A DNA stretch of 63,558 nt, counting the filler, from Octopus bimaculoides (taxonomy: Eukaryota): the NCBI RefSeq assembly GCF_001194135.2. It is 5 parts of 5 records of this genome, joined end to end, with 100 filler letters (N's around TTAATTAATTAA, not from the genome) between each part and the next. Parts side by side here need not be neighbours in the genome. Positions count along the whole stretch, not along the records: positions 1 to 22,118 come from NC_068991.1; 4 more parts are not named here. One strand, written 5' to 3'. Of this stretch, positions 2,001 through 18,560 are shown piece by piece. The position numbers and the translations under genes are program-made. Positions within the stretch are counted from its first letter, which is position 1. Each line of letters starts with the position of its first letter. Below the pieces are notes generated by a model. It was given only the letters and a program-made list of their open reading frames with translations. It made no database searches and was not told the DNA's origin.

Positions 2001-2220
2001 ATTCTTTCTACTATAGGCACAAGGCCTGAAATTCTTGGGGAAGAGGGACTAGTCAATTACATCGACCCCAGTGCTCAACTGCTACTTATTTCATTAACCC
2101 CCGGAAGGATGAAAGGCAAAGTCAACCTCGGCGGGAGTTGAACTCAGAACGTAAAGACGGACGAAATGTCACTTAGTATTTTGCCCAGCGTGCTAACGAT
2201 TCTGCCAAGATCGCCGCCTT
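2001..2220 (-). mobile_element. tRNA-derived SINE, family A (Nin/Deu-domain-like body)
   Basis: Reverse strand reads aaggcggcgatcttggcagaatcgttag...ttctgagttcaactcccgccgaggttgactttgcctttcatccttccggggg..., with A/B-box-like head and (AAT)n tail. There are many homologous copies in the window. The Nin/Deu-domain assignment is from recalled resemblance only. Confidence 0.85.
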
Positions 2221-2399: not shown

Positions 2400-4790
2400 A
2401 GAAGTTAATTATATCAGCTGCAGTATTTGACTGGAGTTAATGTTGAGCGCGGCACGATTTGAACTCAGAACGTAAAGAGCCAGAAGAATTGCCGTTACAT
2501 GCTAACGAATCAGCCATCTCAGCGCCCTCAATAATGATGATCTATTTTTATTTACCACAGGGGCAAAGATGAGGGAACATCACAAGGACAGCCTACAATT
2601 TGTGTGTGTGTGTGTGTGCGGGGAGGCTTACGTAAAAATTATGGGAGCATCACAAGAAGAGTCTACAATTTGTGTGTGTGTGTATGGGTGGTGGTGGTGG
2701 TGGCTTACGTAAAAATGAGGGGGAAAAGGAAAAAACGGTGAAATAAGATAAACGTACACATAATAAACAAAGTATGTGAAAACGAATTATGCAGGAGAAA
2801 CTCCAACAAGGGCCATTAAGGAACCCCTCAAAAATCCAGGTTTACCTTGACCATCAAAAGCACGAAACTGGCTGCCGTGAGAACAGCCGCCAAATATGAT
2901 GAAAGCTTTCGATTGGTTTCAATCTTAGGGGATATCATGTCGACCTCAATGCTTCAATAGTACTTTATTTTATCGAGTCTGAAGAGATGAAAGGCTAAAG
3001 TTGACCTCGGTGGGATTTGAACTAAATATGTAAAGAGCCATAACAAATATGTCCGGTGTTCTAACGATTTTGCAAGTTCGCCACCTTCTTAGAAAATAAA
3101 AATGATTGTTTTCAAATTTAGCACAAGTCGAGCAATTTTGAGCGGATGGAGATTGGTCGATACAATCGACCTCGGTACTTGACTGGTGACTTATTTTATG
3201 AAACACGAAAATGTTGAAAGGCATATTTGATCTCGGAAGTATTTTGAACTCAAAATATAAAGAATTTGAACAAATACCGCATAGCAGATTCCGCCACCTC
3301 ACCGCCTTCATATAAAATATTATAACAACGAAGACAATGCTGATAACAATGGCAGGATCACATTAACAACTGTACTTAGAGATGGTTCTGCCATCAACAG
3401 TGTGTAATTAGCAAGATGTGTGCGGACATATTTATTGACAAGAGTGTTAAGAAAAGTGTGTTAATTTGTTTCATGCTTTTTTTTTTTAGTATTATTTTTG
3501 TGTCTGTTTAATTAAAATTTATTCATTTACAGTTATTTTCCTTTATTTTATTTTATCTTGGAAAGCTTTATTTATTTAAGACGGTATTTTCAAACAAATT
3601 TAATGACTTCTTGTTCTTGTTCTTCTCTTGAAAAAAATTATGTGATCATATTTCCAATTTATTATAGCAAATAATGTCGAACAAGAGATAGGTTTGCAGC
3701 TAATACAATCAGGCGATCATGTTCGATTAAATTCCCTGGAGATGGTAATTTCATTTTATGTTTATCGCGAATTCTCTTCGAGGAGGAAGAAAAAAATATA
3801 TAACGACACGGTTTCGAAATTCGGTTGTAGGTACATCTATCCTTGTTTATACTGATTTCTTTGTCACTGATCCGTGATAAGAGTGTTGGCTCTTGTAAAC
3901 TGTGCTATGTTTATCACGAGATGATCTATAATAAGACGGGCCGGCGATCAGTCAAAGGTTGTTCTGCTTGGACCGCATAAACACGCTCTAGCAACCATCG
4001 AAAATGCAAAGGGCAATCTGGGGTCTCGGAACGAAACCTATTTTAACAGACTCGTAAGAACATCGATAAAAATGCTCTGCGCTGTTTGTTTCGGCTCTTT
4101 ATATTATGAGTTCATAATTTTGTGCCAAAATCATAAACACTTTTACGTATACCCACAAAGGCGGTGAGCTGGCAGAATCATTAGCAGCGTTTCTACCGAC
4201 TTTAGAGCGTCAAAGTCCACCATGTGAAAGGCAAAGTCCACCACGGCAAAATTTGAACTCAGAACATAAAACCAGATGAAATGCCGCTAAGTTTTTTGCC
4301 CAGAGTGCTCCCAATTCGGCCAGCTCACTGCTTTCCACTCACTCAATAATACTGGTCTATGTCTCAACCAAAGATCTGTTAACCTATACCACAAGGGCGG
4401 CTGTGAGCTGGCAGAATCGTTAGGGCGTCGAAATAAATGCTTTGCAACTCTTTACGTTGAGTTCAAATCCCGCTGAAATTAACTTTACCTTTCATCATTT
4501 CAGTGTCGTTAAAATGAAATACCAGCTTAGTGTTGAGATCAATAGCATTATCTCACTTTCTCCTTTGAAAATTGCTAGCTTTGTGCTTACATCATAAACC
4601 ATCTTAAGTATGTACCTGAAAGGTAGCGAGCTGGCAGAAGCTTTAGAGCGTCGATATAAAGAATTTGCTGTCAGCTTGGATTCTTCGCGTTCTGAGTTCA
4701 AATAATGTCGAAGTTAAAGGGAAGTAATTCGTAATTACTTCCGGCACAAAGCCTCAAATTACAAAAAAAAGGTATAAGGGATTAAATCAA
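2400..4790. mobile_element. Cluster of degenerate family-A SINE copies: ~2400-2530(-), 2960-3090(-), 3100-3308(-), 4156-4215(+), 4225-4335(-), 4394-4615(+), 4617-4790(+)
   Basis: Repeated motifs gagctggcagaatc, ttgaactcagaac / gttctgagttcaaat and gaaaggcaaagtc. Confidence 0.75.
2543..2930 (-). mobile_element. Probable 3'-end fragment of a Tx1-like LINE, with an internal ~70-bp tandem duplication
   Basis: Begins ttttatttaccacaggggc, matching the 3' end at ~37213 (ttttatttaccacaaagggc) that lies downstream of a Tx1-like ORF2 remnant. The unit gggaacatcacaag...gcttacgtaaaaat occurs twice. Confidence 0.4.
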
Positions 4791-5768: not shown

Positions 5769-6071
5769 GTGGAGGCACAATGGCCCAGTGGTTAAGGACA
5801 GCGGACTCTTGGTCATAGGATCGCTGTTTCGATTCCCAGACCAGACGTTGTGAGTGTTTATTAAGCGAAAGTACCTAAAGTTCAATGAGTCTCCAGCAGG
5901 GGTAGGTGGCGAACCCTGCTATATTCTTTTACCACAACTTTCTCTCACTAACTCTTTCTTCTTCTTTTGTACCTGTATTTCAAAGGGCCGACCTTATCAC
6001 GCTGAATCTACCCGAGGGTACACGTGTCTGTGGAGTGTTCAGCCACTTGCACGTTAATTTCACGAGCAGGC
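5769..6071 (+). mobile_element. tRNA-derived SINE, family B (OR-like), 3'-truncated
   Basis: Head ggaggcacaatggcccagtggtta...gtttcgattcccagacc has A and B boxes. Colinear with the minus-strand copies at 28551-28926 and 34826-35202. Confidence 0.85.
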
Positions 6072-6257
6072 TCTGAATATTAGTTTATTGAGACAATATT
6101 GGTTAATGGATTTATTTTCATATCGAAGTACGATAAACTGAAAAAAGTTCTTTTTATATTTCACGAGAGGTGCCCAAGGTTGCCGGGTGTGGGAATAAGA
6201 ATACAAGACTTACGGAATGGATCCTTGCGACAATATAAACTTGCATTTAATCGAGAT

Positions 6258-6352
6258 ATCCTTGGCCTGAAGAGTAGCATGCGGTATACACCACGCTTGG
6301 ATATTTACCATTTCCGAGGTTCCGCTTGCTATGAAACATATGTAGCCTGGAT
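6258..6352 (+). ncRNA. Type I hammerhead ribozyme (HHR-1)
   Basis: CUGAAGA 6267-6273. Stem II gtagcatgcgg (6274-6284)/ccgcttgctat (6322-6332). GAAA 6333-6336. Palindromic stem III ACATATGT 6336-6343. GUA triplet, predicted cut 6344/6345. Stem I ggc/gcc plus atcc/ggat. Confidence 0.85.
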
Positions 6353-7354
6353 TTNNNNNNNNNNNNNNNNNNNNNNNNNNNNNNNNNNNNNNNNNNNNNN
6401 NNNNNNNNNNNNNNNNNNNNNNNNNNNNNNNNNNNNNNNNNNNNNNNNNNNNNNNNNNNNNNNNNNNNNNNNNNNNNNNNNNNNNNNNNNNNNNNNNNNN
6501 NNNNNNNNNNNNNNNNNNNNNNNNNNNNNNNNNNNNNNNNNNNNNNNNNNNNNNNNNNNNNNNNNNNNNNNNNNNNNNNNNNNNNNNNNNNNNNNNNNNN
6601 NNNNNNNNNNNNNNNNNNNNNNNNNNNNNNNNNNNNNNNNNNNNNNNNNNNNNNNNNNNNNNNNNNNNNNNNNNNNNNNNNNNNNNNNNNNNNNNNNNNN
6701 NNNNNNNNNNNNNNNNNNNNNNNNNNNNNNNNNNNNNNNNNNNNNNNNNNNNNNNNNNNNNNNNNNNNNNNNNNNNNNNNNNNNNNNNNNNNNNNNNNNN
6801 NNNNNNNNNNNNNNNNNNNNNNNNNNNNNNNNNNNNNNNNNNNNNNNNNNNNNNNNNNNNNNNNNNNNNNNNNNNNNNNNNNNNNNNNNNNNNNNNNNNN
6901 NNNNNNNNNNNNNNNNNNNNNNNNNNNNNNNNNNNNNNNNNNNNNNNNNNNNNNNNNNNNNNNNNNNNNNNNNNNNNNNNNNNNNNNNNNNNNNNNNNNN
7001 NNNNNNNNNNNNNNNNNNNNNNNNNNNNNNNNNNNNNNNNNNNNNNNNNNNNNNNNNNNNNNNNNNNNNNNNNNNNNNNNNNNNNNNNNNNNNNNNNNNN
7101 NNNNNNNNNNNNNNNNNNNNNNNNNNNNNNNNNNNNNNNNNNNNNNNNNNNNNNNNNNNNNNNNNNNNNNNNNNNNNNNNNNNNNNNNNNNNNNNNNNNN
7201 NNNNNNNNNNNNNNNNNNNNNNNNNNNNNNNNNNNNNNNNNNNNNNNNNNNNNNNNNNNNNNNNNNNNNNNNNNNNNNNNNNNNNNNNNNNNNNNNNNNN
7301 NNNNNNNNNNNNNNNNNNNNNNNNNNNNNNNNNNNNNNNNNNNNNNNNNNNNNN

Positions 7355-7434
<80 letters not shown>

Positions 7435-7702
7435 AAGAAAGAGAGAGATTGTGCTTGATAATCCTAAATAATTAACTACCTCCACAATTGAATAAAAGGC
7501 ATGTAGCTATTAGATAATATAATTTCGTTTACTTTATTACATTCTACTTTAAAATAATTAACTTCTTCAATTATAGCTGATACAGCAAATATGCATTTTG
7601 TTCAGTTGAATTAGGATTAACAGGCAAAATCCATACGCCCACTTCTTTTTGAATATCCATCGGCGAGTATCCTCAACACATATATGAATTTATGTGGATG
7701 TC

Positions 7703-8212
7703 TATGTATGTATGTCATTATTCAGTTTATTTCAAGATCTCTTGCCAATAGAGAAAGAAGCGGTTTCTAACCTAGATCCAATGTTCCTTCACAGGGTATT
7801 TTTGTATGTATGTATGTATGTATGTGCAGATTTGTATGTTTTATGTATGTGTTCTCAAGCATATAGTTACATATCTAGACATGCTCATATATATTTAAAT
7901 GATAAACTTCTGGAAAGTTTTACAGATTTTTACAGTTCCAGTGATGGATTGGATCTGTAGTCTTCGAATTTGCTTTCTTCTTTCTGGTTTAGAAAAGCCT
8001 AATTCTTCATGATTAGTATTTAGGCAGTGTGTTACATATCCCAAAGCTCCAATAATTACAGGTACTTGTAACCTGAACTTGTAATCTGTATAGAGTAACA
8101 GCAGATTTCTCAATAGTTCAGCATAGGTGTTCTCTTTTTCACTGATCATCAGCTGTATGTTACCATCCGCTGGGCAGCTAATTTCCACAACTGTGCACAG
8201 TTTCTCTTCTCT
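7703..8212 (-). mobile_element. R4/Dong-like (RLE-type) non-LTR retrotransposon, 5'-truncated: endonuclease C-terminus + 3' UTR + (CATA)n end
   Basis: Translation KLCTVVEISCPADGNIQLMISEKENTYAELLRNL...VPVIIGALG...LGF...GTVKICKTFQKFII* matches the restriction-like endonuclease tail of R4-type LINEs. The 3' UTR is shared with 32545-32862. Confidence 0.8.
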
Positions 8213-8689
8213 TATATATATATATATATCAAAATAAGCAACAAGGATATATAAAGGATAGTGGTACAACAATGCACCAATATTTACTGGAAATAACAGT
8301 CGATAATATACGACGCTATAGTAAAGCTTCACTGTATATATATTGTGGCAAAAATGTTTACGAGCGGCGAACAAAAAAAAATTTCGTCTTACCTGTAAGA
8401 AGAACATTAAATAAATGTACAACCCAGATGTGTGTATATATATATATATATNNNNNNNNNNNNNNNNNNNNNNNNNNNNNNNNNNNNNNNNNNNNNNNNN
8501 NNNNNNNNNNNNNNNNNNNNNNNNNNNNNNNNNNNNNNNNNNNNNNNNNNNNNNNNNNNNNNNNNNNNNNNNNNNNNNNNNNNNNNNNNNNNNNNNNNNN
8601 NNNNNNNNNNNNNNNNNNNNNNNNNNNNNNNNNNNNNNNNNNNNNNNNTATATATACATATATATAATTACGTATGTGCTAACAACGAA

Positions 8690-10675: not shown

Positions 10676-11000
10676 ATTGGTTTCAAATTTTGGCACAAGG
10701 TCAGCAAGTTTGTTCAACTGGTACTTATTTTATTGACCTTGAAAGGACGAAAGGCAAAGTCGACCACGGCAGAATTTGAACTCAGAACGTGAAGACGGAC
10801 GAAATGCCACTAAGCATTTGGCCCAGCGTGCTAACGATTCTGCCAGCTCGGACGAAAAAGAAGGCGGCAAGCCAGCAGAAACGTTAGCACGCCGGGAAAA
10901 ATTCTTAGCGACATTTCATTCGTCGTTAACTTCTGAGTTCAAATTCTACTGAGGCCGACTTTACCTTTCGTCCTTTCGATGAAATAAATACCAGTTGAAT
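10676..11000. mobile_element. Head-to-head pair of family-A SINEs: 10676-10855(-) and 10857-11000(+)
   Basis: ...cgtgctaacgattctgccagctcg (minus head) abuts aaggcggcaagccagcagaaacgttagcacg (plus head). Confidence 0.8.
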
Positions 11001-11002
11001 TT

Positions 11003-11187
11003 TATTAATTTACAGAATTATATAAATTGTGGTTAAATTTATATAAATTTACAGAATTATATAAAACGAGGTTAAATTTATATAAATTTACAGAATTATA
11101 TAAAACGAGGTTAAATTTTAAATTTACAGAATTATATAAAACGAGGTTAGATTTTAAATCTACAGAATTTTATAAAACGAAGTTAAA
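11003..11187. repeat. AT-rich minisatellite, 39/36-bp units (ttaaatttatataaatttacagaattatataaaacgagg), ~5 copies
   Basis: Direct tandem repeats; also visible as LNLYKFTELYKTR repeats in the ORF track. Confidence 0.9.
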
Positions 11188-11617
11188 CATATTGGCCACC
11201 TCCGCCTTTCCTTTCAGGGATAGCCACCGCCAAGACCAGGTATTGACTATGTGGATCACCCTGCTCGATACCTCGGCCCAGTTCTTCTCGATTTGGAGGT
11301 CTGGTCCAAACCAAACACCTAGCATCTTAATCGGACCCTCCGTCCAATGTCCCACGACGCTGTCAGGAGGCATCGACTTGCCTCTCCAGGTGCCGAGCTG
11401 CAAGCCGACTGACTTTTCACGATTAACTTTTGCTCCTGCCACCGTCTCGTAAACCTTAATGGCCTTGCTTACCCTCTGTAGGTGATCCATTTCGGTTACG
11501 ATGATGGAGATGTCATCCGTGTACGCTGAATCCGAGTTTCCACAACTTGGCTGTCTCGGGATGCCGCTCAATTTTCGCGGTAATGGCTTAAGAGCCATTA
11601 CATACAAAAGCGCGGAG
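11188..11617 (-). mobile_element. Tx1/L1-clade LINE reverse transcriptase fragment, runs into a gap
   Basis: SALLYVMALKPL...SAYTDDISII (YADD-like)...GAKVNREKS...LGVWFG...WSWRWLSLKGKAEVANMF is typical L1/Tx1 RT and thumb sequence. Confidence 0.85.
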
Positions 11618-12663
11618 NNNNNNNNNNNNNNNNNNNNNNNNNNNNNNNNNNNNNNNNNNNNNNNNNNNNNNNNNNNNNNNNNNNNNNNNNNNNNNNNNNN
11701 NNNNNNNNNNNNNNNNNNNNNNNNNNNNNNNNNNNNNNNNNNNNNNNNNNNNNNNNNNNNNNNNNNNNNNNNNNNNNNNNNNNNNNNNNNNNNNNNNNNN
11801 NNNNNNNNNNNNNNNNNNNNNNNNNNNNNNNNNNNNNNNNNNNNNNNNNNNNNNNNNNNNNNNNNNNNNNNNNNNNNNNNNNNNNNNNNNNNNNNNNNNN
11901 NNNNNNNNNNNNNNNNNNNNNNNNNNNNNNNNNNNNNNNNNNNNNNNNNNNNNNNNNNNNNNNNNNNNNNNNNNNNNNNNNNNNNNNNNNNNNNNNNNNN
12001 NNNNNNNNNNATCGTGCAATTCACTATATATTTACATTTAACAGAGTTTTCTGCAAAAATAAAAATAATATATATTATTTGAACTCTTAAAATCAAAAAC
12101 CAATATTCTAATTTTTTAAAATAGTGTACCCAAATGACCATAATTTACTTAAAATGCACACAGTACTTCCTTCCCTCCCTCCCACTCAGAGTTTAATTCG
12201 GTTGACATGTTTGCAGTTATAATTTGCATTTATATTAAGACTTTCCTAGCGGGGCTCCCTAGAGAAGTCACGCTTTGTAAAAAAAAAAAAAAAAAAATCC
12301 TGTTTCAATTCTGATGTATAATTTTATAGATGTTAATAAAGATATTTCATTATGTTTTAGATTTAGTTCCATACTAAAGGTTGTTGAAAATACGACATTC
12401 GAACGCATTTTATTATGTTAAGAATTTCAGTTATTTTTTTCGATTTTGTTCCATAGAAAATTCTGTCTTAAGAGTAAAACCCGAACGTATGTGGCAAGCA
12501 TAATAATAAGGACTAGCGAAATCGATGGAGTTTCCACGGGTTTCTTCAGTGAAAGGTAATTAAATGAAAATAACTTATTCATTTAATACATTTCCTTCCA
12601 AAAGTAAAATAGCTTTTAATAATAATAGCTCGTCGATTAAATAGGTTTAATGCACATTTTCTT

Positions 12664-14252: not shown

Positions 14253-15509
14253 NNNNNNNNNNNNNNNNNNNNNNNNNNNNNNNNNNNNNNNNNNNNNNNN
14301 NNNNNNNNNNNNNNNNNNNNNNNNNNNNNNNNNNNNNNNNNNNNNNNNNNNNNNNNNNNNNNNNNNNNNNNNNNNNNNNNNNNNNNNNNNNNNNNNNNNN
14401 NNNNNNNNNNNNNNNNNNNNNNNNNNNNNNNNNNNNNNNNNNNNNNNNNNNNNNNNNNNNNNNNNNNNNNNNNNNNNNNNNNNNNNNNNNNNNNNNNNNN
14501 NNNNNNNNNNNNNNNNNNNNNNNNNNNNNNNNNNNNNNNNNNNNNNNNNNNNNNNNNNNNNNNNNNNNNNNNNNNNNNNNNNNNNNNNNNNNNNNNNNNN
14601 NNNNNNNNNNNNNNNNNNNNNNNNNNNNNNNNNNNNNNNNNNNNNNNNNNNNNNNNNNNNNNNNNNNNNNNNNNNNNNNNNNNNNNNNNNNNNNNNNNNN
14701 NNNNNNNNNNNNNNNNNNNNNNNNNNNNNNNNNNNNNNNNNNNNNNNNNNNNNNNNNNNNNNNNNNNNNNNNNNNNNNNNNNNNNNNNNNNNNNNNNNNN
14801 NNNNNNNNNNNNNNNNNNNNNNNNNNNNNNNNNNNNNNNNNNNNNNNNNNNNNNNNNNNNNNNNNNNNNNNNNNNNNNNNNNNNNNNNNNNNNNNNNNNN
14901 NNNNNNNNNNNNNNNNNNNNNNNNNNNNNNNNNNNNNNNNNNNNNNNNNNNNNNNNNNNNNNNNNNNNNNNNNNNNNNNNNNNNNNNNNNNNNNNNNNNN
15001 NNNNNNNNNNNNNNNNNNNNNNNNNNNNNNNNNNNNNNNNNNNNNNNNNNNACACACACACACACACAGACGCATACGCATTCATACGCAAAGGACCGAT
15101 TCGTACACATACATACACATTACTCCCATATGACAGATGGTAGTGTTGGTGGCGGTAGTGTTATTTGTAGTGGCGGTGGCGATGATGGTGGAGTGAGTAT
15201 GGATGTGATGCTGGTGATGCTGGTCATTTCATTGTTGTTGTTGCTGTTGTTGTTGTTGGTACTATTGTCGTCGTCGTCGTCGTCGTTGTTGAGGATGATG
15301 ATGATGGTGATGCTGATGACCTGTGATAGATGGGTTCTTTAAATAAACGTACAGTTTATGTCTCAGTAAATACCTGTACACACACATACACACAACCGCA
15401 TACACACACATATATAAATATACATTCACTTGGACATACACATACATACAGAACAACCTCTAAGAACATATACGCATACACGTACCGAGATATTTGCAAA
15501 CACACACAG

Positions 15510-15539
<30 letters not shown>

Positions 15540-15542
<3 letters not shown>

Positions 15543-15810
15543 AACACACACACGCACAAAACACACACATGCTCATAAAAAACATTTACGCAAACACACA
15601 AATACCACACACACGCACACACGCATCCTCATAAAAATATTTACACAAACACACAAATACCACACACACACACACACACACACGCACACACAAACACACA
15701 CGCGCACAAAAACACACACATGCTCATAAAAAACATTTACGCAAACACACAAATTAAACACACACGCACACACGCATCCTCATAAAAATATTTACACAAA
15801 CACACAAATA

Positions 15811-15864
<54 letters not shown>

Positions 15865-15965
15865 AAACATACACGCATCTTCATAAAACATTTACACAAA
15901 CACACATGCATCCTCATAAAAAAAAATTACGCAAACACACAAATGCCACACACATGCACACACTA
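15540..15965. repeat. Compound minisatellite of ~150-170-bp (CA)n-laced units, ~2.5 copies
   Basis: catgctcataaaaaacatttacgcaaacacac and cgcatcctcataaaaatatttacacaaacacacaaatacc recur in register. Confidence 0.8.
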
Positions 15966-18322: not shown

Positions 18323-18560
18323 GTGGAGACGCGTGGCTTAGTGGTTAGGGTGTCGGACTCCTGATCGTAAGATTGTGGTTTCGATTCCTGGACCGGGCGA
18401 TACATTTTGTTCATTTTGTTCTTGAGAGAAACACTTCATTTTACGTTGCTCCACTCCAGTCAGCTGGTAAAAATAAGCCGTCCTGCGACAGACCAGAGTT
18501 CCGTCCACGTGAGAGATATATACGCTATGGAAATCGGGAAACCGGCCCTTATTAGTCTAT
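18323..18560 (+). mobile_element. tRNA-derived SINE related to family B
   Basis: tggagacgcgtggcttagtggttagggtgtcggactc...gtttcgattcctggaccgggcg head, then a gttcttgagagaaacacttca core-like motif. Confidence 0.75.

What the first reader, a model, noticed from the sequence alone, without database searches (positions are those of the whole stretch)
6258..6352. Near-perfect type I hammerhead ribozyme abutting a 1-kb assembly gap
Seen in sequence: all catalytic core nucleotides are present (CUGAAGA, GAAA, GUA triplet). Stem II is 11 bp (one U-U mismatch, G-U closing pair, 37-nt loop), stem III is a perfect 8-nt palindrome (ACAUAUGU), and stem I is bipartite. Established: type I hammerheads with very short palindromic stem III occur in Penelope-like element pseudo-LTRs and non-LTR retrozymes, where they can cleave as dimers and yield circular RNAs from tandem copies. 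Inference: the ~1-kb gap starting 2 nt downstream may hide further tandem copies. The upstream ...TRLTEWIL/RQYKLAFNRD only weakly resembles a GIY-YIG C-terminus. I know of no description of this long-stem-II family in octopods, but cannot check.
Basis: partly seen in the sequence, partly recalled or inferred. Interest (0 to 1): 0.9.

Follow-up and report, generated by a model that had tools for sequence, protein, structure and literature searches.

The report
Hammerhead ribozyme in a foldback repeat
The sequence is a real, intact-looking self-cutting RNA motif (a type I hammerhead ribozyme) inside a short non-coding repeated element of the kind carried by Penelope-like retrotransposons, so it is a new example of a known kind, not a new kind of thing.

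Summary
Window 6258-6352 (+) has a full type I hammerhead: core CUGAAGA, GAAA, GUA; an 11-position helix II with one U.U and a G.U at its base; a bipartite helix I; the palindrome ACAUAUGU as helix III; predicted cut 6344/6345; the gap starts at 6355. Chance is negligible, about 1e-7 expected per window.

Rfam's hammerhead models miss it, probably because helix II spans 59 nt. That reason was not tested.

One relative was found, Logan contig L002, 79.5% identical over a 22-nt upstream box plus the whole ribozyme. Its copy is decayed: C3 is U, stems are broken, and every CpG is lost. After the ribozyme, L002 carries the reverse complement of window 6145-6203, then unrelated DNA 79 nt past the cut.

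The best reading is a roughly 280-nt foldback element, with the ribozyme between long inverted arms and helix I extended into a rod. No reverse transcriptase or GIY-YIG endonuclease lies nearby.

It most likely is a monomeric, non-autonomous, Penelope-dependent element (retrozyme-like) that cuts only as a dimer. Tandem copies in the gap and a GIY-YIG remnant are not supported. Catalysis, copy number and host species remain untested.

The parts
6145..6203 (+). Left inverted-repeat arm 'X' of the element; its outer end (about 6145) is the likely left terminus
   Evidence: The reverse complement matches L002 996-1055, which lies downstream of the L002 ribozyme (blastn 76%, E 1e-5; Smith-Waterman z = 14.7, 0 of 500 shuffles; alignment). 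Homology stops at 6145 on the window side and at 1055 in L002.
6214..6221 (+). GGAATGGA, a further left-arm segment that would extend helix I
   Evidence: It is perfectly complementary to L002 994-1001 (TCCATTCC) in the chimeric fold. The window's own partner lies in the gap, so this is inference.
6236..6257 (+). Conserved 22-nt box 'Y' immediately 5' of the ribozyme
   Evidence: Homology with L002 starts here (window 6236 = L002 868). 6254-6258 is complementary to L002 987-991.
6258..6266 (+). Helix I, 5' strand (distal AUCC 6258-6261, UU internal loop, proximal GGC 6264-6266)
   Evidence: Read; paired in the MFE and centroid folds.
6267..6273 (+). Catalytic core C3-A9, CUGAAGA
   Evidence: It is the only site in the window that also has helices I and II.
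6274..6332 (+). Helix II, 59 nt: an 11-position stem (6274-6284 with 6322-6332; G.U at 10.1/11.1, U.U at 6280/6326), an internal loop, and a distal 6-bp hairpin (6296-6301 with 6313-6318). The ATG at 6279-6281 lies inside it.
   Evidence: The U.U and the basal G.U are shared with L002. There are two compensatory pairs, C-G to U-A, between the two copies.
6333..6336 (+). Core G12 A13 A14 A15.1 (GAAA)
   Evidence: identical in L002.
6336..6343 (+). Helix III, the palindrome ACAUAUGU (A15.1 to U16.1). In a monomer it gives only 2 bp plus an AUAU loop; in a dimer it gives an 8-bp duplex.
   Evidence: The monomer hairpin costs +1.1 kcal/mol, the self-duplex is -7.0 kcal/mol, and the dimer pair probabilities are 0.91-0.996. 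It is identical in L002.
6344..6345 (+). Predicted self-cleavage site, after H17 = A6344 of the GUA triplet
   Evidence: Position follows from the hammerhead numbering applied. Cleavage itself was not tested.
6345..6352 (+). Helix I, 3' strand (GCC 6345-6347, U, GGAU 6349-6352)
6355..7354 (.). Assembly gap of 1000 N. By analogy with L002 it should begin with about 70 nt of right arm, the reverse complement of 6145-6258.
   Evidence: N run found. The content is inferred from L002 985-1055. It is followed by (TA)18(AG)29 at 7355-7448.

Best explanation
Window 6258-6352 encodes a genuine type I hammerhead ribozyme. It is the centre of a short, non-coding, repeated element of about 280 nt.

Element order: left arm X (6145-6203), 32 nt, box Y (6236-6257), ribozyme, about 12 nt, then a right arm that is the reverse complement of the left arm. 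In this assembly the right arm is lost in the gap. In the transcript the two arms pair and prolong helix I into a long rod. Helix II is a second long hairpin of 59 nt. Helix III is only a 2-bp stem with a palindromic AUAU loop.

The RNA would cut itself between A6344 and G6345 by the usual hammerhead transesterification, leaving a 2',3'-cyclic phosphate and a 5'-OH. Because helix III is too weak in a monomer, cutting probably needs two copies paired through ACAUAUGU (a double hammerhead).

The element has no reverse transcriptase or endonuclease of its own. It most likely is a monomeric copy of a non-autonomous retroelement copied by Penelope-like-element enzymes, related to their pseudo-LTRs and to animal non-LTR retrozymes.

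What is shown and what is inferred:
- Shown: the motif, its non-chance nature, one homologue, the inverted-arm relation, the absence of nearby coding capacity, and the predicted dimer.
- Inferred: the right arm in the gap, the element's termini, mobilisation by Penelope-like elements, and catalytic activity.
For: - Motif and fold.
- Chance excluded: 1 site against 0.0067 per shuffled window; 0 of 300 shuffles with the palindrome; about 1e-7 per window.
- Homologue: P0002, E 1.9e-4 against 1.84 billion proteins, leads to L002. L002 is 79.5% identical over window 6236-6352, E 1e-24.
- Inverted arm: (z = 14.7).
- Rod: a chimeric fold of the window's left half with L002's right half pairs 6145-6198, 6214-6221 and 6254-6258 with L002 1055-987. 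This runs straight into helix I while the hammerhead junction is kept.
- Dimer.
- No coding capacity: no RT or GIY-YIG upstream. The L002 frame stops 30 nt after the cut and L002 has no RT ORF.
- Age: all 7 CpGs of the window copy are TG or CA in L002. The window copy therefore looks younger or closer to the source sequence, and its core is intact while L002 has C3 changed to U.
- Published parallels: Penelope-like-element hammerheads have a larger helix II, a short helix I with a closing stem, and a palindromic helix III, and they act as dimers (PMC4209133, PMC6765202). Animal retrozyme consensus lengths are 51-972 bp, monomers are common, and the units are related to pseudo-LTRs (bioRxiv 10.64898/2026.07.22.740005). 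In the Poseidon element PAc, reverse transcription starts 85-92 nt after the hammerhead cut (PMC11167929); here the element ends 79 nt after the cut. Penelope families are recently active in Octopus vulgaris (PMC13282606).
Against: - Only two copies are known, and the second is decayed. Covariation is therefore uninformative: 2 compensatory pairs, with 113 of 500 shuffles doing as well.
- No Rfam hammerhead model matches, even at E<=10.
- The 10.1/11.1 pair is G.U, not the conserved G-C. There is a U.U in helix II and no recognisable loop-loop tertiary contact, so activity may be low or absent.
- No Penelope-like reverse transcriptase was found in the window or in L002. The only RT is a LINE-type fragment at 11173-11616 on the other strand. 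The link to Penelope-like elements therefore rests on architecture and on the literature.
- The window's right arm is unseen, and L002 lacks the left arm. The foldback is reconstructed from two different copies.
- Neither the species of the window nor that of L002 could be identified.
Confidence: 0.6

Rival explanations
1. The ribozyme sits in the 5' pseudo-LTR of a full-length Penelope-like element. Its ORF would start at the ATG inside helix II (6279-6281) and continue into the gap.
For: - The ATG at 6279 is in frame with an open frame of 90 codons that runs into the gap.
- In Poseidon PAc the ORF starts at helix II, with the cut 26 nt downstream (PMC11167929).
- Penelope families are active in octopus (PMC13282606).
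Against: - In L002 the ATG is TTG, and the frame stops 30 nt after the cut. It is followed by the inverted arm and unrelated DNA.
- No protein in 5.8 billion shares the predicted N-terminus.
- The gap is sized at 1 kb, while a Penelope ORF needs about 2.5-3 kb.
- Nothing RT-like lies on the + strand after the gap.
Confidence: 0.1
2. The ribozyme is the first unit of a tandem array (a non-LTR retrozyme or satellite) that collapsed into the gap. Transcripts would be cut into unit lengths and circularised.
For: - A dimer-dependent helix III is typical of tandem hammerhead repeats (PMC7229834, PMC4209133).
- The contig breaks 10 nt after the cut.
- The reconstructed unit of about 280 nt lies in the published size range.
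Against: - The window has a single copy.
- Sequence left of 6145 is not unit sequence.
- In L002 the element is followed by unrelated DNA 79 nt after the cut, and the 867 nt upstream hold no other unit.
- Both copies end at the outer ends of the arms, not at the cleavage site.
Confidence: 0.15
3. It is a foldback or miniature inverted-repeat DNA transposon whose long terminal inverted repeats happen to enclose an old hammerhead. The ribozyme would play no part in its movement and might be inactive.
For: - Arms of about 60 nt or more in inverted orientation, a size of about 280 bp, and AT-rich ends.
- Non-canonical G.U at 10.1/11.1 and a U.U in helix II.
Against: - L002 lacks the left arm, which looks like the 5' truncation usual for retro-copied elements.
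- No target-site duplication can be seen.
- Hammerheads of this architecture are known from retroelements.
- The complementarity runs on through box Y into helix I. That fits an RNA rod better than transposase-binding ends.
Confidence: 0.1
4. The motif is a chance match to the hammerhead consensus.
For: - No Rfam hit.
- The folding z-score is only -1.25.
Against: - Expected frequency is about 1e-7 per window and about 0.015 per 2.7-Gb genome.
- 0 of 300 shuffles reproduced it.
- A homologous copy elsewhere keeps GAAA, helix III, the cleavage triplet and 6 of the 7 letters of CUGAAGA.
Confidence: 0.01

Closest known systems
Hammerhead ribozymes of Penelope-like elements ('min-HHR' and small palindromic helix III variants; Cervera & de la Pena 2014, PMC4209133; Lunse, Weinberg & Breaker 2017, cited from PMC6765202)
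   Same: - Type I topology.
- Helix II larger than usual.
- Short helix I followed by an internal loop and a closing stem.
- Palindromic 15.x-16.x segment, predicted to work as a dimer.
- Occurs as solitary copies spread through the genome.
   Different: - Helix II is much longer here: 11 positions plus a second hairpin, 59 nt in all, against 6-8 bp.
- There is no unpaired nucleotide between A9 and 10.1.
- The 10.1/11.1 pair is G.U, not G-C.
- No RT/GIY-YIG ORF is near either copy.
- Helix I is prolonged by arms of about 60 nt or more.
Animal non-LTR retrozymes (Cervera & de la Pena 2020, PMC7229834; Li, Clavereau & Pollet 2026, bioRxiv 10.64898/2026.07.22.740005)
   Same: - Type I hammerhead whose helix III is 2 bp plus a palindromic tetraloop, as described for invertebrates.
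- Non-coding unit of a few hundred nt with low GC.
- Monomeric copies are known.
- Proposed dependence on Penelope-like elements.
   Different: - No tandem arrangement is seen in the window or in L002.
- Helices I and II are not the canonical 6 bp and 4 bp with loop-loop contacts.
- The copies end at the rod's closed end, not at the cleavage site.
- Circular RNA was not examined.
Rfam Hammerhead_1 (RF00163), the model that gave 235 hits in the giant squid genome (PMC6962438)
   Same: Same catalytic core, same type I topology and same cleavage triplet.
   Different: The model does not detect this sequence at all. The likely reason is the 59-nt helix II and the loop-less palindromic helix III. 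That reason is an inference and was not tested.
Schistosome Sm-alpha / Sj-alpha SINE-like hammerhead elements (Ferbeyre 1998 and Laha 2000, cited from PMC6765202)
   Same: A short non-autonomous repeat carrying a type I hammerhead. A tRNA-derived SINE head lies about 300 nt upstream in the window.
   Different: The SINE at 5773 onward is a separate neighbouring insertion: L002 does not share it, and homology starts only at 6236 (direct) or 6145 (inverted). No Pol III promoter boxes lie inside the element. The T5 run at 6151-6155 would stop Pol III.

Membership tests
Hammerhead ribozyme, type I | Conserved core C3 U4 G5 A6 N7 G8 A9 ... G12 A13 A14 | tested here: met
   CUGAAGA at 6267-6273 and GAA at 6333-6335.
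Hammerhead ribozyme, type I | A15.1-U16.1 pair and an N-U-H cleavage triplet | tested here: met
   A6336 pairs with U6343; the triplet is G6342 U6343 A6344.
Hammerhead ribozyme, type I | Three helices around the core, with helices II and III closed and helix I open | tested here: met
   The MFE and centroid folds give helices I and II. Helix III forms 2 bp plus a tetraloop in the monomer, or 8 bp in the dimer.
Hammerhead ribozyme, type I | Conserved G10.1-C11.1 pair | tested here: not met
   G6274 faces U6332, a wobble pair, in both the window and L002.
Hammerhead ribozyme, type I | Score at or above the Rfam gathering threshold for a hammerhead covariance model | tested here: not met
   No hammerhead family at gathering score or at E<=10. 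The same holds for L002.
Hammerhead ribozyme, type I | Compensatory changes in the helices and core conservation among homologues | tested here: inconclusive
   Only 2 sequences. There are 2 pairs changed on both sides in helix II, and 84.6% of cells are paired against about 40% when partners are slid. 113 of 500 shuffles do as well. The L002 core has C3 changed to U.
Hammerhead ribozyme, type I | Site-specific self-cleavage | not testable with these tools
   Needs in vitro transcription of monomer and dimer constructs.
Hammerhead of a Penelope-like element (pseudo-LTR) | Lies in the terminal repeat of an element encoding RT plus GIY-YIG endonuclease | tested here: not met
   No Pfam family in the + frames of 3.3 kb upstream. 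No RT ORF in L002. The only RT in the window is a LINE-type fragment on the other strand, 5 kb away. The downstream side is the gap.
Hammerhead of a Penelope-like element (pseudo-LTR) | Short palindromic helix III, enlarged helix II and short helix I | tested here: met
   compared with PMC4209133.
Hammerhead of a Penelope-like element (pseudo-LTR) | Extra unpaired nucleotide between A9 and 10.1 | tested here: not met
   A9 (6273) is followed directly by the paired G6274.
Animal non-LTR retrozyme | Head-to-tail tandem units of roughly 170-400 bp, each with a type I hammerhead | tested here: inconclusive
   One ribozyme in the window and one in L002. A 1-kb gap follows the window copy.
Animal non-LTR retrozyme | Expressed as small circular RNAs | not testable with these tools
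   No transcriptome data could be queried by nucleotide sequence.

The most novel reading that the evidence does not exclude
The element would represent a currently active family of roughly 280-nt rod-shaped hammerhead RNAs that standard models miss. Unit-length or circular transcripts would fold so that the two arms form a long hairpin. A Penelope-like reverse transcriptase would start at the apex of that hairpin, about 79 nt after the ribozyme cut. That would explain why both known copies end exactly at the outer ends of the arms rather than at the cleavage site. It would be a natural example linking internal initiation by Penelope-like enzymes to retrozyme-type RNAs.
Probability: 0.15. Interest if true: 0.55.

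Novelty: new member of a known kind. Interest (0 to 1): 0.3.

Why it matters
- It is a clean example of a hammerhead that curated covariance models miss, probably because helix II is very long. Published counts of hammerheads in such genomes, for example 235 in the giant squid, may therefore be too low.
- The window copy keeps an intact core and all its CpGs, so the family may still be active.
- The foldback layout, with termini 79 nt after the cut, gives a concrete, testable handle on how Penelope-type enzymes copy ribozyme-bearing non-autonomous RNAs.
- Inverted arms may also explain the assembly gap at this place.
- Beyond that, it is an ordinary component of a repeat-rich genome.

Tried and rejected
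- **Rfam.** Gathering threshold on the whole piece, E<=10 on 5800-6354 and on L002: no hammerhead family. A potC-like match at 6271-6335 (18 bits, E 0.94) only reflects the long hairpin.
- **Second copy in the window.** blastn with word size 7 found none. A core-plus-6-bp match on the minus strand near 8150 lies inside an ORF and lacks helices I and III, so it is chance.
- **Coding capacity.** Pfam on the three + frames of about 3.3 kb upstream and on four candidate ORFs gave only a weak RVT_1 hit on a LINE-type fragment at 11173-11616 (-).
- **Protein-space searches for spurious ORFs from sister copies.**
  - The 85-aa ORF: nothing.
  - A profile of the ORF plus P0002: only P0002 itself.
  - A chimera of the other five frames of both copies: nothing.
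  - The exhaustive representative search gave P0002, which is useful, and P0001, a 3951-aa leucine-rich-repeat protein that is a spurious repeat match.
- **Exact look-up** of the window ORF 6060-6206 (-): not on record.
- **DNA pattern scans.** The metagenome scan gave one GC-rich coding chance match, L001, with no helix III. Genome and viral collections gave 0 for two patterns. These collections do not hold animal genomes.
- **Literature.** String searches for the ribozyme sequence returned only unrelated primers. A search for the SRA run of L002 gave nothing relevant. Lunse et al. 2017 is not held.
- **Direct homology** between the window's and L002's upstream flanks: rejected (z = -0.6).
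- **Thermodynamic significance:** z = -1.25, not informative.

Full report
**1. The observation**

- Helix I is bipartite: AUCC 6258-6261 with GGAU 6349-6352, and GGC 6264-6266 with GCC 6345-6347.
- The core CUGAAGA is at 6267-6273.
- Helix II is 6274-6284 with 6322-6332. Ten of its eleven positions pair. There is a U.U at 6280/6326 and a G.U at its base.
- GAAA is at 6333-6336.
- Helix III is the palindrome ACAUAUGU at 6336-6343.
- The GUA triplet ends at A6344, so the predicted cut is 6344/6345.
- The run of N is 6355-7354.
- The 37-nt 'loop' of helix II contains a further 6-bp hairpin, 6296-6301 with 6313-6318.

The MFE and centroid structures are the hammerhead three-way junction. The folding energy is not unusual (z = -1.25), as expected for a motif with a large unpaired core.

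**2. Is it more than chance?**

A descriptor of my own was run on both strands of the real sequence and on 300 dinucleotide-preserving shuffles. It required the core, helix II of at least 4 bp, helix I of at least 3 bp, and an optional palindromic helix III. It found one site in the window, this one, against 0.0067 per shuffled window. No shuffle also carried the palindromic helix III.

A composition-based calculation for the full motif gives about 1e-7 per window and about 0.015 per 2.7-Gb genome. That calculation required 10 of 11 pairs in helix II, an 8-nt palindrome and both parts of helix I. Chance is excluded for practical purposes.

Rfam nevertheless reports no hammerhead family, either at gathering score or at E<=10 on 555 nt. 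The probable reason is the 59-nt helix II and the loop-less helix III.

**3. Surroundings**

The window is a mosaic of repeats.

- A tRNA-derived SINE head starts at about 5773. Related heads lie at about 18340 (+) and about 18990 (-).
- No Pfam family matches any + frame of about 3.3 kb upstream.
- The 90-codon open frame 6084-6353 has no Pfam match.
- The only reverse transcriptase is a weak RVT_1 hit on a LINE-type fragment at 11173-11616 on the other strand.
- There is no second copy of 6080-6354 in the window.

The suggested GIY-YIG remnant is therefore not supported.

**4. A relative**

I therefore searched protein space for spurious ORFs read through sister copies.

The word-indexed search found nothing. 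The exhaustive search of 1.84 billion representatives returned P0002, a 69-aa ORF that is 58% identical over the ribozyme (E 1.9e-4). It is encoded on L002, a 1110-nt Logan contig of run SRR11869390.

At the DNA level, L002 868-984 matches window 6236-6352 at 79.5% identity (E 1e-24). That stretch is a 22-nt upstream box plus the whole ribozyme, without indels.

- GAAA, helix III, the cleavage triplet, proximal helix I, the U.U mismatch and the basal G.U are all shared.
- L002 is a decayed copy. C3 is U, helix II keeps 7 of 11 pairs, and distal helix I is broken.
- All seven CpGs of the window copy are TG or CA in L002. The window copy is therefore the better-preserved one.
- Two helix II pairs changed on both sides, C-G to U-A. 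With two sequences this is not statistically meaningful: 113 of 500 shuffles do as well.

Two further protein searches found no more copies.

**5. The element**

L002 upstream of 868 is not homologous to the window upstream of 6236 (z = -0.6). However, L002 996-1055, just downstream of its ribozyme, is the reverse complement of window 6145-6203 (76% identity; z = 14.7). Homology stops at window 6145 and at L002 1055.

I joined the window's left half to L002's right half as a proxy for one complete copy and folded it. The left arm (6145-6198, 6214-6221, 6254-6258) pairs with L002 1055-987 and runs directly into helix I. The hammerhead junction is kept.

The simplest reading is a unit of about 280 nt: arm, 32 nt, box Y, ribozyme, 12 nt, inverted arm. 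On this reading the window copy has a complete 5' end and has lost its right arm in the gap. L002 has a complete 3' end and is 5'-truncated at box Y. Such truncation is usual for elements copied through RNA.

The L002 frame stops 30 nt after the cut, and its helix II ATG is TTG. No Penelope ORF follows the ribozyme there.

**6. Mechanism**

*Shown by computation.* In a monomer, helix III (2 bp plus AUAU) is unfavourable by about 1 kcal/mol. Two molecules are predicted to form the double hammerhead, with an 8-bp intermolecular helix III and swapped helix I strands. The dimer folds at -59.8 kcal/mol against 2 x -25.3, with pair probabilities of 0.91-0.996.

*From established knowledge.* Hammerheads cleave 3' of H17 by attack of the 2'-OH. 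Metazoan type I hammerheads with short palindromic helix III act as dimers. Those of Penelope-like elements are slow in vitro (PMC4209133, PMC6765202).

*Inferred.* This RNA cuts at 6344/6345 when two copies meet, either in tandem or in trans. Its rate is probably modest, because of the G.U at 10.1/11.1, the U.U in helix II and the lack of recognisable loop-loop contacts.

*Also inferred.* The element is copied by Penelope-type enzymes.
- Its architecture matches their hammerheads.
- Animal retrozymes have been shown to be related to Penelope pseudo-LTRs, and they occur as monomers (bioRxiv 10.64898/2026.07.22.740005).
- Penelope families are recently active in Octopus vulgaris (PMC13282606).
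- In the Poseidon element PAc, reverse transcription starts 85-92 nt downstream of the hammerhead cut (PMC11167929). This element ends 79 nt downstream of its cut.

**7. Rivals**

- A full Penelope element whose ORF starts at the ATG in helix II has a precedent in PAc. L002, the absence of any protein with that N-terminus, the gap size and the lack of RT beyond the gap all argue against it.
- A tandem retrozyme array hidden in the gap remains possible. Neither copy shows unit sequence beyond the arms.
- A foldback DNA transposon fits the inverted arms. It fits the truncated L002 copy less well, and it fits poorly with complementarity that continues into helix I.
- Chance is excluded.

**8. Comparison and novelty**

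This is a type I hammerhead of the Penelope/retrozyme kind. It differs in several respects:

- a very long helix II;
- helix I prolonged into a rod by arms of about 60 nt or more;
- a G.U at 10.1/11.1;
- no bulge after A9;
- invisibility to Rfam.

Helix lengths vary widely among natural hammerheads, and hammerheads are already reported from a cephalopod genome (PMC6962438). I therefore rate it a new member of a known kind, of modest interest.

Four things could not be established: the host species, the copy number, any link to a specific autonomous element, and catalytic activity.

Noticed in passing
window 6279-6353 (+): An ATG inside helix II is in frame with a 90-codon open frame (6084-6353) that runs into the gap. 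This recalls Poseidon PAc, whose ORF starts in helix II. In L002 the ATG is TTG and the frame stops 30 nt after the cut.
   Followed up: yes
window 6145-6354 compared with L002 868-1055: All seven CpG dinucleotides of the window copy are TG or CA in L002. This suggests methylation-driven decay of L002 and a younger or better-preserved window copy.
   Followed up: partly
window 5773-~5950 (+), 18340-18560 (+), 18990-18700 (-): Three tRNA-derived SINE heads with A- and B-box-like sequence whose tails diverge. ARAGORN calls no tRNA. The pair near 18.3-19.0 kb is in inverted orientation.
   Followed up: partly
window 11173-11616 (-): Reverse-transcriptase fragment (Pfam RVT_1, E 2e-5, below the curated cut-off) with a ...YTDD... 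motif. It looks like a LINE type and abuts the gap at 11618-12010.
   Followed up: partly
window 7898-8449 (-): A 184-codon open frame ending ...VVEISCPADGNI...VPVIIGALGYV... with no Pfam match. It may be the C-terminal part of a retrotransposon protein and is interrupted by the gap at 8452-8648.
   Followed up: no
window 7355-7448: (TA)18 followed directly by (AG)29 right after the gap. AT-rich microsatellites are preferred targets of some Penelope-like elements (PMC8557442) and could also be what broke the assembly.
   Followed up: no
window 10994-11187 and 15497-15906: Tandem repeats: a 39-nt unit in 5.2 copies (91% matches), and a 151-nt AC-rich unit in 2.7 copies (90% matches).
   Followed up: no
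window 2030-2170, 4118-4500, 10733-10950: A second dispersed repeat family, recognisable by recurring translated strings such as ...GGELAESL... and ...NLNSE..., present in both orientations.
   Followed up: no
window 6355 (gap start) compared with L002 987: The contig ends exactly where, by analogy with L002, the right arm complementary to 6254-6258 and beyond would begin. Inverted repeats are a known cause of contig breaks, so this may explain the gap.
   Followed up: partly
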